Below, piece after piece: positions 21,999 through 24,281 of a stretch of DNA of 64,000 bases. Location of the stretch: positions 62,001 to 126,000 of IMG/VR virus record IMGVR_UViG_3300043446_004437, one strand, 5' to 3'. Under the pieces are notes generated by a model, which worked only from the letters and a program-made list of their open reading frames with translations, was not told where the DNA came from and searched no databases. Within the stretch, counting starts at the first letter, position 1; each line of letters starts with the position of its first letter. Made by a program: the position numbers and the translations under genes.

Positions 21999-22071
21999 GG
22001 GCCGTTAGCTCAGCGGTTAGAGCAGGGCACTCATAATGCCTTGGCCGTAGGTTCGATCCCTACACGGCCCA
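21999..22071 (+). tRNA. tRNA-Ile2 or Met (CAT)
   Basis: GGGCCGT/ACGGCCC acceptor, loop CTCATAA; identity ambiguous. Confidence 0.9.
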
Positions 22072-22073
22072 CT

Positions 22074-22987
22074 ATGACAAAAAAAACTAAGAAACAAAAA
22101 GAAAAACCTATTGTTGATAGTGTCTATGCATTAGAAACACTTGTTACAAGTTTTGTTCCATCAGCCGATTTTGATTATGACAATGAAGGTCAGATTATTA
22201 TCTATACAAATCTTTATACAGATGATGATGGGAACTTGCTCCAAAAGGTATCTTTATGAACAAAAAGATTGGCGCAATCACTGATCATCCATCTATAATT
22301 TGTTTAGAATGTTATAATGATGGACGCCTTCAACATTACGAAAAGCATAATGTAGTTTGGGCTTATTCTGATGGATATCCGGACGGATATACTTGTGATG
22401 ATTGCGGAGATGTCTACAACAAACAAGGAAAGATTGTAACACAATAGTAAACAAGCGTATTGAACATTTTATTCGTTAAAGGAAACAGTGTGGTAGATAA
22501 TACTCAATCTAAGCCGTTTGTATTTATGCAGTTTGCTCCAGAAGGAGAATGCTCATACTGTGATCGCGAACGAGCGCAAGGAAACAAATGGTTTCCACCA
22601 CATACTGCTAGACCAAATTGCCAAAGTGGTCAATACAACCACTGCACTTGCGACACCTGCTATTAAGGATTAATTATGACTCTTACATGTCCATGCAAAT
22701 ATAGTTTTTTAAACTGGCATTTTCCAGTTTGCGATCCACATGAAGACGACGAAGATTAGGAATACAATATGATTACATTACCTAAAAATCCTTTGAACAG
22801 TTACGGCACACAACCAGCTGTAACCAATTTAAAAATTGGTGACGTTTTGTATATTGGCGATCAGTACACACTTGAAGAAATGACAGTAACAGGTTTTAAA
22901 TCAGACGGAAATAATTTTATTATTTACACTGATAAAGAAACTTTATCTGCCACTAACATAACTAGAGTTAATAAAAAAGGTTTTTAA
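22074..22987 (+). CDS. four small hypothetical ORFs (22074-22259, 22256-22447, 22526-22666, 22769-22987), two Cys-rich
   Basis: ORF track plus manual start choice. Confidence 0.6.
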
Positions 22988-23077
22988 AAATGTCGTTGGC
23001 TAAATTTAGAAAAGTTTCTAAAGGACCCAAAAAACCGGAACCTAAACCAGAACCTGAACAGCCAAAGGAGAAGTAAT

Positions 23078-23611: not shown

Positions 23612-23613
23612 CT

Positions 23614-23805
23614 AAGACAGCAACGTGATACACTTAACCTAGTGTGTGGAACGCAAGAATGATGTAATAAACACGTGGGACCCATATTCTCCTGGCATCA
23701 TTGCTGTCTTTTAATTTCATGATAGTAGCGCATTAAACTGTTGGTAATGGTAGAATATAAATGCGTACTACGGCTTCCCGTTGTAGAACTCTATCACTAC
23801 TATCA
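23614..23805 (+). ncRNA. two tandem structured elements (23614-23710, 23720-23805)
   Basis: Perfect closing stems aagacagcaa/ttgctgtctt and tgatagtag/ctactatca, each with internal hairpins. Confidence 0.45.
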
Positions 23806-23863
23806 CCTTTTAAAGAAAGAATAATTAAATGTTAACTAACCGAATAGGCAACATATAAGACAC

Positions 23864-23939
23864 AGGGCGGTATACCCTCACTCTTATAAAGTGTTGAAAG
23901 GTTAGTTGGTCCACGTGGGTTCAATCCCCACCCGCCCTA
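23864..23939 (+). tRNA. atypical D-armless tRNA-Ile(TAT)-like gene
   Basis: AGGGCGG/CCGCCCT acceptor, GTGGG-TTCAATC-CCCAC T-arm, CACT-CTTATAA-AGTG anticodon arm, no D-arm. Confidence 0.7.
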
Positions 23940-23954
23940 CTAAAGAGGCACTCA

Positions 23955-24281
23955 ATGTTCATTCAACGCAAGCCTTGGATGCAGGAAGCATCATGTGTTG
24001 AGCAAAGTTTAGATATATTTTTCCCCAACAGATATACAGAAAACACCGTTTCTAAACCATTTTCTGTATGTGAACAGTGTTCTGTTAGATGCGAATGTTT
24101 ATACGAAGCTATGACAACTGAATCTGTTGGCATATGGGCGAAAACAACAGACTATCAAAGATCAGTTATCATGTCTAGATTTTTTAATGATAACCCAAAA
24201 AATATTAACATTGACACAATATTCCAGATCGTTGAAAACAATAATTATTCTATACCAATTTCATTAAAATACGATCAATAA
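23955..24281 (+). CDS. whiB: WhiB-family protein #3
   Basis: WMQEASC...FFP...C..C.V..EC and GIWA. Confidence 0.9.
   Translation: MFIQRKPWMQEASCVEQSLDIFFPNRYTENTVSKPFSVCEQCSVRCECLYEAMTTESVGIWAKTTDYQRSVIMSRFFNDNPKNINIDTIFQIVENNNYSIPISLKYDQ

What the first reader, a model, noticed from the sequence alone, without database searches (positions are those of the whole stretch)
23864..23939. D-armless tRNA-Ile(UAU)-like RNA with a D-loop-like motif in the variable region
Seen: normal acceptor and T arms, but only TATACCC between the acceptor and the anticodon stem. A 20-nt variable segment contains AGTTGGT, and ACC can pair with GGT to extend the anticodon helix. UAU anticodons are rare in bacteria, which normally read AUA with lysidine-modified CAU (established). 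ATA is abundant in the AT-rich genes here. Inference: a rearranged tRNA architecture for TilS-independent AUA decoding, or a tRNA mimic.
Basis: partly seen in the sequence, partly recalled or inferred. Interest (0 to 1): 0.6.

Follow-up and report, generated by a model that had tools for sequence, protein, structure and literature searches.

The report
Phage tRNA with a rearranged core
This 76-base gene belongs to a large, phage-only family of isoleucine and arginine tRNAs whose D-stem strands sit on either side of the anticodon arm, an arrangement that standard tRNA finders miss and that I found described in no paper.

Summary
Window 23864-23939 (+) has a normal 7-bp acceptor stem, a normal T arm and a 7-nt anticodon loop with UAU. 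It has no D arm in the usual place, and a D-loop-like stretch lies before the T arm.

It is not a one-off. I collected 219 distinct homologues from at least 258 phage loci. They occur in Streptomyces, Rhodococcus, Microbacterium, crAss-like and Vibrio phages, and in no bona fide cellular chromosome.

Covariation supports a 3-bp helix (ACC/GGU here) that brackets the anticodon hairpin. It also supports a Levitt-like R15:Y48 pair.

Every member carries an Ile-type anticodon (UAU, GAU, CAU) or an Arg anticodon (ACG, UCU, CCU, UCG, CCG). All 114 Arg members have the A20 equivalent, the ArgRS determinant. Ile members have U20 (a few C20) and A73.

The genes sit in phage tRNA arrays, and their anticodons avoid those of neighbouring canonical tRNAs.

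Best reading: a working tRNA-Ile(UAU) for AUA, the commonest Ile codon in this 36.6% GC jumbo phage. Expression and charging were not tested.

The parts
23864..23870 (+). Acceptor stem, 5' strand (positions 1-7)
   Evidence: Pairs with 23932-23938. All seven pairs covary across homologues; 97% of cells are paired.
23871..23873 (+). Connector UAU: U8 and A9 equivalents, plus a U that faces U at 23903 (the 22/13-like layer)
   Evidence: U8 and A9 are invariant by construction, because every collecting pattern fixed them. The third base is at least 90% U, and A in a few sequences. The 10/40 pair is not Watson-Crick.
23874..23876 (+). ACC: 5' strand of the 3-bp helix that brackets the anticodon arm. 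It takes the place of D-stem positions 23-25.
   Evidence: Pairs with 23900-23902. 100% paired in 148 sequences, with pair types CG/AU/GC/UA and CG/UA/AU/GC. These are among the top mutual-information pairs.
23877..23878 (+). CU: 5' side of the asymmetric internal loop
   Evidence: Present in all 219 collected members. It was left free in the pattern, though the and patterns fixed it. A rare variant has AA (L109).
23879..23893 (+). Anticodon arm: 4-bp stem, 7-nt loop CUUAUAA, anticodon UAU at 23885-23887, U33, A37, A38
   Evidence: All four stem pairs covary and are 100% paired. The loop matches the bacterial tRNA-Ile pattern.
23894..23899 (+). UUGAAA: 3' side of the internal loop (two variable bases, then GAAA)
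   Evidence: GAAA is invariant in the collected set because the search patterns fixed it. Divergent variants exist. Its role as a groove-filling substitute for the variable loop is inferred.
23900..23902 (+). GGU: 3' strand of the bracketing helix. It takes the place of D-stem positions 10-12.
   Evidence: Covaries with 23874-23876.
23903..23914 (+). D-loop-like connector UAGUUGGUCCAC: A14, R15, G18 G19, U20, an A21-like A, and a Y48-like C next to the T stem
   Evidence: R15 covaries with the base 5' of the T stem: AU 111, GC 23, GG 12. Position 20 is U (rarely C) in Ile members and A in all 114 Arg members.
23915..23931 (+). T arm: 5-bp stem and UUCAAUC loop
   Evidence: 98% paired, and four of five pairs covary. 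Rfam's tRNA model aligns it normally.
23932..23939 (+). Acceptor stem 3' strand and discriminator A73. CCA is not encoded; the next bases are CUA.
   Evidence: A73 is present in all 105 Ile-type members. The base after the discriminator is C in nearly all members, and full CCA is encoded in about 17% of Ile-type and about 66% of Arg-type genes.

Best explanation
The locus is a gene for a working elongator tRNA-Ile(UAU) of a phage-specific structural class with a permuted core.

In an ordinary tRNA the order is: acceptor, D-stem 5' strand, D loop, D-stem 3' strand, anticodon arm, variable loop, T arm. Here the order is: acceptor, U8-A9, a strand equivalent to the D-stem 3' strand, anticodon arm, a GAAA-containing linker, a strand equivalent to the D-stem 5' strand, D-loop sequence, T arm.

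The result is a three-way junction. The short D-like helix is continuous with the anticodon stem, as in the normal coaxial stack. The D-loop residues (A14, R15, G18, G19, position 20, A21) are still placed to build the elbow with the T loop and to pair with U8 and Y48.

Inferred steps: the RNA is transcribed with the phage's other tRNAs, trimmed, given CCA, charged by the host IleRS through A35, U36, A37, A38, U20 and A73, and used to read AUA. AUA is the phage's commonest Ile codon.

Sister members with Arg anticodons carry the ArgRS determinant A20 and would be charged by ArgRS.

The order could have arisen by an internal duplication followed by two deletions. This is inference.

Why the architecture is kept is not shown. 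My favoured guess is that it evades a host factor that recognises the normal tRNA core, such as a tRNA-targeting nuclease.
For: 1. Structure. Covariation in every helix, including the new 3-bp helix (100% paired, four pair types), and in the Levitt-like pair. An unbiased mutual-information ranking returns exactly these pairs. RNAalifold gives the same fold.

2. Identity. In 219 distinct members the anticodons are only UAU 60, GAU 37, CAU 8, ACG 46, UCU 43, CCU 18, UCG 5 and CCG 2. Scans that left the anticodon free found nothing else in IMG/VR, and only one chance match in metagenomes.

3. Identity elements. Anticodon position 35 and position 20 are perfectly linked: C35 with A20 114 times, A35 with U20 101 times and with C20 3 times. 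A73 is present in all Ile-type members. These match the published bacterial Arg and Ile identity sets (PMC9976931).

4. Context. None of 273 instances is called by ARAGORN, yet 89 of 238 lie within 20 nt of a canonical tRNA.

5. Non-redundancy. Where a canonical tRNA for the same amino acid lies in the same locus, it shares the anticodon in only 5 of 72 cases. Shuffling gives 25.2 +/- 3.5, with a minimum of 12 in 5000 shuffles.

6. A whole-genome example. In Streptomyces phage Mildred21 the only cloverleaf tRNA-Arg is CCU. The family supplies ACG and UCG, and a divergent relative supplies UCU.

7. This phage. ATA is 47% of Ile codons. The seven canonical tRNAs read AGA, UUA, AAA, ACA, GGA, AAY and AUG or AUA, and none is a canonical Ile(GAU/UAU).

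8. Distinctness. The family model scores the element at 84.6 bits, though the element is itself a seed sequence, and scores the window's canonical tRNAs at 19.8 bits or less.
Against: No promoter or terminator signal stands out above shuffles.

Some E. coli Ile determinants are absent or cannot be mapped: C4-G69 is G-C here, and U12-A23 and C29-G41 are not conserved.

The anticodon stem has only four Watson-Crick pairs.

A few genomes carry a canonical tRNA with the same anticodon, for example Mildred21 Ile GAU, so the element is not always needed for codon coverage.

The window also has a CAU tRNA at 21999-22072 that may itself be an AUA reader.

Several invariant columns are invariant because the search patterns fixed them. 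The sequences are related by descent, so cell counts overstate the number of independent events.

The three-dimensional model is reasoning from positions, not a computed or solved structure.
Confidence: 0.75

Rival explanations
1. A tRNA mimic or decoy that is not used in translation. It would soak up or misdirect a host factor aimed at tRNA-Ile or tRNA-Arg, such as an anticodon nuclease, a synthetase or a modification enzyme.
For: The core is abnormal and the anticodon stem is short. A few phages also carry a cloverleaf tRNA with the same anticodon. Restriction to two identities could reflect two specific host targets. Colicin_D-fold tRNases exist (PMC9990079); that colicin D cuts tRNA-Arg, and that other members of the fold cut tRNA-Ile, is my recollection only.
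Against: A decoy has no reason to avoid the anticodons of the phage's own canonical tRNAs (5 of 72 collisions against 25 expected). It has no reason to keep the discriminator, position 20, a full acceptor stem and often an encoded CCA. Phage Mildred21 would lack CGN and AGA readers in an otherwise near-complete set.
Confidence: 0.12
2. A precursor that is cut and rejoined after transcription into an ordinary cloverleaf tRNA, using phage RNA ligase and kinase.
For: Streptomyces phages that carry the family also encode RNA ligase, polynucleotide kinase and a tRNA nucleotidyltransferase. Permuted tRNA genes that mature through RNA circles are known in a red alga (my knowledge).
Against: Restoring the canonical order would need two cuts and two ligations inside the molecule. 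No bulge-helix-bulge-like or other processing motif is conserved. The helix between the two strands covaries as it stands in the primary transcript. No RNA ligase appeared among the fifteen commonest neighbour families, eight of which I identified with Pfam.
Confidence: 0.03
3. A decayed tRNA pseudogene or a chance tRNA-like sequence.
For: The single-sequence fold is not better than shuffles. Gene finders skip it.
Against: There are 219 distinct homologues with compensatory changes in every helix. The family is spread across phages of at least three host phyla.
Confidence: 0.01
4. A structured RNA with a non-translational role that merely uses tRNA parts, for example a recombination or integration target, a replication primer, or a marker for homing-endonuclease mobility.
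For: HNH endonuclease genes lie within 3 kb in 80 of 258 loci, and some abut the element.
Against: Acceptor stems differ completely between members while keeping their pairing, which points to an RNA-level constraint rather than a DNA target. Anticodon and identity-element logic would be unnecessary. HNH genes are common throughout phage tRNA regions, for example four in the Mildred21 tRNA region.
Confidence: 0.04

Closest known systems
Canonical bacterial and phage cloverleaf tRNA (Rfam RF00005), specifically tRNA-Ile and tRNA-Arg
   Same: 7-bp acceptor stem, 5-bp T stem with a UUCRANY loop, 7-nt anticodon loop with U33 and A37, similar length (76-78 nt). All universal tertiary residues have equivalents: U8, A14, R15:Y48, G18 G19, A21, G53-C61. 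The identity elements are present: A73 and U20 for Ile; A20, C35 and U/G36 for Arg.
   Different: The strand order of the core is permuted. The two D-stem strands flank the anticodon arm, and the D-loop sequence lies where the variable loop should be. This gives a three-way rather than a four-way junction. There is no variable loop, and the anticodon stem has 4 bp. ARAGORN misses it and Rfam scores it at the threshold.
D-armless mitochondrial tRNA-Ser(AGY/UCN) of animals and other truncated mitochondrial tRNAs (reviewed in PMC7609411 and PMC4013460)
   Same: No hairpin D arm, a three-way junction, and still thought to work in translation.
   Different: In those tRNAs the D arm is replaced by a loop on the 5' side, and the conserved D-loop/T-loop contacts are lost or weakened. 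They work with co-evolved mitochondrial factors. Here the connector is on the 3' side and keeps the full D-loop consensus. The T arm is canonical, and the RNAs must work with ordinary bacterial machinery of several phyla.
Permuted tRNA genes of the red alga Cyanidioschyzon merolae, and split or permuted archaeal tRNA genes (PMC4033280 appeared; the details are my knowledge)
   Same: tRNA segments appear in the genome in a non-standard order.
   Different: Those genes are whole-molecule circular permutations that are processed back into a normal cloverleaf. Here the acceptor ends are in normal order, the permutation is internal, and covariation indicates that the RNA folds as encoded.
allo-tRNAs with 8/4 or 9/3 acceptor/T branches (PMC5389517)
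   Same: Non-canonical tRNA architectures found by mining metagenomes, some of them in phages.
   Different: Those change helix lengths in the acceptor/T branch and keep a D arm. This family keeps 7/5 and rearranges the D/anticodon branch.
Canonical bacterial tRNAs with 4-bp anticodon stems (PMC13092985)
   Same: The top pair of the anticodon stem is unpaired. In this family the 27/43-like position is mostly U opposite U.
   Different: Those are ordinary cloverleaf tRNAs. The paper does not mention phages or a missing D arm. Whether the short stem widens wobble reading here is untested.

Membership tests
tRNA (canonical cloverleaf, Rfam RF00005) | 7-bp acceptor stem with an unpaired discriminator | tested here: met
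   23864-23870 pairs with 23932-23938. All seven pairs covary across 148 sequences.
tRNA (canonical cloverleaf, Rfam RF00005) | 5-bp T stem, 7-nt T loop with the U54 U55 C56 R57 A58 consensus, G53-C61 | tested here: met
tRNA (canonical cloverleaf, Rfam RF00005) | Anticodon hairpin with a 7-nt loop, U33 and purine 37 | tested here: met
   Loop CUUAUAA. The stem has 4 Watson-Crick pairs rather than 5.
tRNA (canonical cloverleaf, Rfam RF00005) | D arm: a hairpin between the acceptor and anticodon arms, with stem 10-13/22-25 enclosing the D loop | tested here: not met
   The Rfam alignment deletes 15 model positions here. The stem strands instead enclose the anticodon arm.
tRNA (canonical cloverleaf, Rfam RF00005) | Conserved tertiary residues U8, A14, R15:Y48, G18 G19, A21 | tested here: met
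   All are present, but in permuted order. The R15:Y48 equivalent covaries: AU 111, GC 23, GG 12.
tRNA (canonical cloverleaf, Rfam RF00005) | Score at or above Rfam's gathering threshold | tested here: inconclusive
   Not reported in the default scan. It reaches 30.9 bits against 29 in the sensitive scan. Canonical tRNAs in the window score 45-70 bits.
tRNA (functional definition) | Processed to a stable RNA with CCA, aminoacylated, and used on the ribosome | not testable with these tools
Only indirect support is available.
Bacterial tRNA-Ile identity set (PMC9976931) | A73, A35, U36, A37, A38, U20 | tested here: met
   All are present in the window copy. A73 occurs in 105 of 105 Ile-type members, and position 20 is U in all but a few, which have C.
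Bacterial tRNA-Ile identity set (PMC9976931) | C4-G69, U12-A23, C29-G41 (E. coli determinants) | tested here: not met
   Pair 4/69 is G-C here and varies freely across the family. The D-stem and anticodon-stem equivalents also vary.
Bacterial tRNA-Arg identity set (sister members, not the window copy) | A20, C35, U/G36, A/G73 | tested here: met
   A20 equivalent in 114 of 114. Position 36 is only U or G. The discriminator is mostly G or A, with some U.
D-armless mitochondrial tRNA-Ser type | D-replacement loop on the 5' side, with weakened D/T-loop contacts, in an organelle with adapted partners | tested here: not met
   The 5' connector is 3 nt. The long connector is on the 3' side and keeps the D-loop consensus. 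The setting is phage.
Permuted tRNA genes (circular permutation processed to a cloverleaf) | The 3' half is encoded upstream of the 5' half, with the acceptor ends joined in the precursor | tested here: not met
   The acceptor 5' and 3' strands are at the two ends of the element in normal order.
Known tRNA-like RNAs (tmRNA tRNA-like domain, Y-RNA-like YrlA, viral 3' tRNA-like structures) | Match to the respective Rfam models; no decoding anticodon arm | tested here: not met
   No such Rfam match up to E = 10. A complete anticodon arm is present.

The most novel reading that the evidence does not exclude
Phages have evolved, and spread across hosts of several phyla, a second way of wiring a tRNA. 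The result is a three-way-junction molecule whose D-stem strands are swapped around the anticodon arm, and which still forms the L shape and is charged and decoded by ordinary bacterial machinery. The architecture is kept, and is limited to the two class Ia identities Ile and Arg, because it escapes a host factor that recognises the normal core of these tRNAs, for example a tRNA-cleaving defence or competition nuclease. On this reading it is a structural counter-defence and not only a codon supplement.
Probability: 0.25. Interest if true: 0.92.

Novelty: new variant of a known kind. Interest (0 to 1): 0.85.

Why it matters
If these RNAs are charged and decoded, the tRNA L shape can be built with a different strand connectivity and still satisfy RNase P, the CCA enzyme, two synthetases, EF-Tu and the ribosome of many bacteria. 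That bears on how the tRNA fold arose, on what each partner really reads in the core, and on the design of orthogonal tRNAs.

There is also a practical consequence. Phage tRNA repertoires are being under-counted and mis-annotated. In about 80 sequenced Streptomyces phages the Ile-type element is unannotated. In others it is labelled tRNA-Leu, tRNA-Phe or tRNA-OTHER.

Cultured hosts are available (Streptomyces, Rhodococcus, Microbacterium, Bacteroides), so the question is directly testable. The restriction to Ile and Arg is an unexplained regularity that could point to a specific host-phage conflict over these two tRNAs.

Tried and rejected
- **Expression evidence.** No read-level evidence exists.
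- **Promoter and terminator scan** around the element: no more sites than in shuffles.
- **Other isotypes.** Five IMG/VR scans with the anticodon freed and other anticodon classes required returned nothing. A metagenome scan returned one locus, L289, which has no acceptor or T pairing and no tRNAs nearby. I judge it a chance match.
- **Cellular genomes.** The scan of 185,579 species gave 28 pattern matches. Thirteen matched the full-element pattern, and most of those sit in dense phage-like tRNA arrays on MAG contigs. Two are the same records as IMG/VR phage contigs. Two further partial or divergent copies, on short MAG contigs, surfaced only with nhmmer. The matches in finished or scaffold-level chromosomes did not contain a full element. 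E. coli genomes gave no match.
- **A dedicated protein partner.** Clustering of 3,838 neighbouring ORFs found no synthetase or modification enzyme. The commonest neighbour is an HNH endonuclease.
- **Extra pairs 10/40 and 15/31.** These were tested and are not Watson-Crick, mostly U opposite U.
- **The hairpin inside the D-loop-like segment** predicted by the single-sequence fold is not conserved in homologues.
- **The Rfam minus-strand match** to a plastid ycf2 leader (E = 0.46) is noise.
- **Literature.** Eight full-text searches found no description of this architecture. The library lacks most subscription journals, so this is absence of evidence only.
- **The CAU tRNA at 21999-22072.** Whether it is Met or lysidine-type Ile was not resolved.

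Full report
**Setting**

The window is bases 62001-126000 of a 216,024-bp IMG/VR virus record that CheckV rates as complete. The genome is 36.6% GC. ARAGORN finds seven tRNA genes in the whole genome. All are in the window and on the + strand, and none is at the flagged site. The ORF just downstream of the site (23955-24281) is a WhiB-type regulator, which suggests an actinobacterial host.

**The observation**

There is a 7-bp acceptor stem with discriminator A, a canonical T arm, and a 4-bp stem closing a CUUAUAA loop. Only seven bases lie between the acceptor and that stem. A 20-nt 3' segment contains a D-loop-like AGUUGGU.

Rfam's tRNA model does not report the site in its default scan. In the sensitive scan it reaches 30.9 bits against a threshold of 29, by deleting the D arm and inserting 17 nt in the variable region.

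On its own the sequence does not fold better than shuffles. Whether it is real therefore had to be settled with relatives.

**Relatives**

BLAST against GenBank phages found the whole 77-nt element at 79-86% identity in about 82 Streptomyces phages, in Rhodococcus phage Peregrin, and in a crAss-like Bacteroides phage. It is almost always unannotated.

In the crAss-like phage it fills an otherwise empty gap of about 90 nt inside a tRNA array. In Streptomyces phage EGole it is labelled tRNA-Leu.

Pooling all scans gave 219 distinct elements in at least 258 loci.

The scan of one genome for each of 185,579 prokaryotic species gave only 28 pattern matches. Thirteen of these matched the full-element pattern. 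Most sit in dense, phage-like tRNA arrays on MAG contigs, and two are the same records as IMG/VR phage contigs. Two further partial or divergent copies on short MAG contigs surfaced only with nhmmer. No match in a finished chromosome contained a full element. E. coli genomes gave no match. As far as these data go, the family is phage-specific.

**Structure**

On 148 distinct sequences (alignment A3) I counted pairs for a structure with four helices:
- the acceptor stem;
- a 3-bp helix formed by the three bases after the UAU connector and the three bases after GAAA;
- the 4-bp anticodon stem;
- the T stem.

Pairing is 90% overall, against 58% in shuffles and 38-48% when partners are slid. That overall figure includes two trial pairs that proved not to be Watson-Crick. 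The covariation score is 0.835 against 0.206, with 0 of 500 shuffles reaching it.

The new 3-bp helix and the anticodon stem are 100% paired. Two of the three new pairs show four pair types each. The third pair was fixed by my search patterns, but divergent members found with nhmmer change it to G-C or A-U.

A mutual-information ranking that assumes no structure returns exactly these pairs at the top. RNAalifold predicts the same consensus fold.

A family covariance model scores the window copy at 84.6 bits. The window copy is a seed member, so this score is partly by construction. The same model scores the window's cloverleaf tRNAs at 19.8 bits or less. The class is therefore clearly separate from ordinary tRNAs.

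**The D-loop-like segment is a real D-loop equivalent**

After the 3' strand of the new helix the consensus reads U, A, R, two variable bases, G, G, one base, one to three bases, C, A, then one base next to the T stem. This matches A14, R15, G18, G19, position 20 and A21, followed by Y48.

The R15-like base covaries with the base next to the T stem: A-U 111, G-C 23, G-G 12. That is how the Levitt pair behaves.

Every universally conserved tertiary residue of tRNA therefore has a counterpart, but the order along the chain is permuted. The strand that leads into the anticodon stem takes the place of D-stem positions 23-25. The strand that leaves the anticodon arm takes the place of positions 10-12 and runs straight into the D loop.

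In a normal tRNA the D stem stacks on the anticodon stem. Here the same stack is simply a continuous, imperfect hairpin, and the molecule has a three-way junction. That the GAAA bulge fills the groove normally occupied by the variable loop is my inference.

**Identity**

My first pattern fixed anticodon positions 35 and 36, so I ran scans that freed them.
- With A35 and a base other than U at 36: no hits.
- With 35 not C and 36 not U: no hits at either spacing.
- With G or U at 35 and U at 36: no hits.
- With C35: more than 120 loci.

All C35 members carry Arg anticodons. No Gly, Trp, Cys or Ser(GCU) anticodon appears. A metagenome scan added only one chance match.

The tally of distinct members is UAU 60, GAU 37, CAU 8, ACG 46, UCU 43, CCU 18, UCG 5 and CCG 2. 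The CAU members could be Met or lysidine-type Ile.

All 114 Arg members read GGA in the D-loop-like motif, which is the A20 equivalent. Ile-type members read GGU, or rarely GGC. The link between position 35 and position 20 carries 1.0 bit of mutual information.

A20 with C35 and U/G36 is the published bacterial arginine identity set. A73, A35, U36, A37, A38 and U20 belong to the isoleucine set (PMC9976931). All Ile-type members have A73.

This is the strongest indirect sign that host ArgRS and IleRS read these RNAs, and that the D-loop-like segment sits where a D loop should.

**Context and repertoire logic**

ARAGORN calls none of 273 instances. Yet 89 of 238 lie within 20 nt of a canonical tRNA, and the median distance is 87.5 nt.

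Where the same locus holds a cloverleaf tRNA for the same amino acid, its anticodon nearly always differs. There are 5 collisions in 72 non-redundant cases, against 25.2 +/- 3.5 after shuffling anticodons among loci and a minimum of 12 in 5000 shuffles.

Typical pairings are a permuted GAU with a cloverleaf UAU (24 loci) and a permuted ACG with a cloverleaf UCU (13 loci).

Streptomyces phage Mildred21 has cloverleaf tRNAs for all amino acids, but CCU is its only Arg anticodon. The family supplies ACG (unannotated) and UCG (annotated as tRNA-Phe). A divergent relative, annotated tRNA-OTHER, supplies UCU.

In the window's own phage ATA is the commonest Ile codon, at 47% of Ile codons and 32.6 per 1000. 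AGA, UUA, AAA and ACA dominate their families. The seven cloverleaf tRNAs read exactly such codons, and there is no cloverleaf Ile(GAU/UAU). The element fits as the AUA reader.

**What is not shown**

Several E. coli Ile determinants (C4-G69, U12-A23, C29-G41) are not conserved.

A few genomes duplicate an anticodon between the two architectures.

The collection was gathered with patterns that fix several columns. The sequences share ancestry, so cell counts are not independent events. The pair-type counts, the slid controls and the divergent nhmmer hits reduce this concern but do not remove it.

**Why Ile and Arg, and why this architecture**

This is open. A single change at position 35 plus one at position 20 converts one identity into the other, so a single origin followed by switching is plausible.

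Lys, Thr, Asn, Val and Gly anticodons are equally close in sequence but absent. That suggests only some synthetases tolerate this core. Both tolerated enzymes are subclass Ia.

A counter-defence role, escaping a nuclease that reads the normal core, is attractive. Colicin_D-fold tRNases are known (PMC9990079). That colicin D cuts tRNA-Arg, and that some other members cut tRNA-Ile, is my recollection and not a result obtained here.

The short anticodon stem may also alter wobble reading, as reported for cloverleaf tRNAs (PMC13092985). This is untested for the family.

No dedicated protein partner was found. The commonest neighbour is an HNH endonuclease, as elsewhere in phage tRNA regions.

**Novelty**

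Eight full-text literature searches, and a reading of the main review of non-canonical tRNAs, found no description of this arrangement. The library lacks most subscription journals, so prior description cannot be excluded.

I rate it a new structural variant of a known kind of molecule. It has high interest because it is widespread, testable in cultured phages, and changes what counts as a minimal tRNA core.

Noticed in passing
window 23955-24281 (+): The ORF immediately downstream of the element is a WhiB-family regulator (Pfam E = 6e-11). Together with the low GC content (36.6%), this suggests a jumbo phage of a low-GC actinobacterium.
   Followed up: partly
window 21999-22072 (+): The tRNA called Met(CAU) may be a lysidine-type tRNA-Ile rather than Met. 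If so, the phage would carry two AUA readers. I could not classify it with the tools at hand.
   Followed up: no
window 7076-43847 (+): All seven cloverleaf tRNAs of the 216-kb genome lie scattered in this window on one strand. Their GC content is about 48-62% in a 36.6% GC genome. They read mainly A-ending codons (AGA, UUA, AAA, ACA, GGA) that dominate the phage's codon usage.
   Followed up: partly
L288 (Streptomyces phage Mildred21, MF155946.1) record 91367-91442, 86379-86453, 94860-94931, 73705-73776; L003 (EGole) 1499-1575: GenBank annotations of family members are wrong or missing. An Arg(UCG) member is labelled tRNA-Phe(gaa). An Ile(GAU) member is labelled tRNA-Leu(UUA). One member is tRNA-OTHER, and two are unannotated.
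   Followed up: yes
258 phage loci, within 3 kb of the element: HNH endonuclease genes are the commonest neighbours (80 of 258 loci). In 37 of 102 cases the ORF abuts or overlaps the element. This may bear on how these genes spread between phages.
   Followed up: partly
all family members, first base after the discriminator (window 23940): The base after the discriminator is C in nearly every member, even where CCA is not encoded. Full CCA is encoded in about 17% of Ile-type and about 66% of Arg-type genes. This may reflect a 3'-processing constraint.
   Followed up: no
L109:9514-9583, L013:8852-8922, L156:3300-3369, L258:1412-1564, L206:3568-3639, L253:9164-9217: Divergent sub-variants of the same topology exist. 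One has an internal loop AA/UUUUA instead of CU/..GAAA. Some have a 2-bp bracketing helix with a 5-bp anticodon stem, and some have the third bracketing pair changed to G-C or A-U. All still carry Arg or Ile anticodons.
   Followed up: partly
L129:1883-1960 and L145 (same sequence): An Arg(ACG) member whose sequence departs from the family just after the T loop and lacks a matching acceptor 3' strand. It may be disrupted or carry an insertion.
   Followed up: no
L288 (Mildred21) record 73167-73688, 80769-82421, 99529-102077: The Ile-type element lies 16 nt downstream of a phage tRNA nucleotidyltransferase gene. The same tRNA region also encodes a Ro-like protein, an RNA ligase, a polynucleotide kinase and a tmRNA.
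   Followed up: no
window 22073-23077 and 23613-23863: About 1 kb without an ORF of 80 aa or more, and a 250-nt spacer between tRNA-Thr and the element. I did not examine either for further small RNAs.
   Followed up: no
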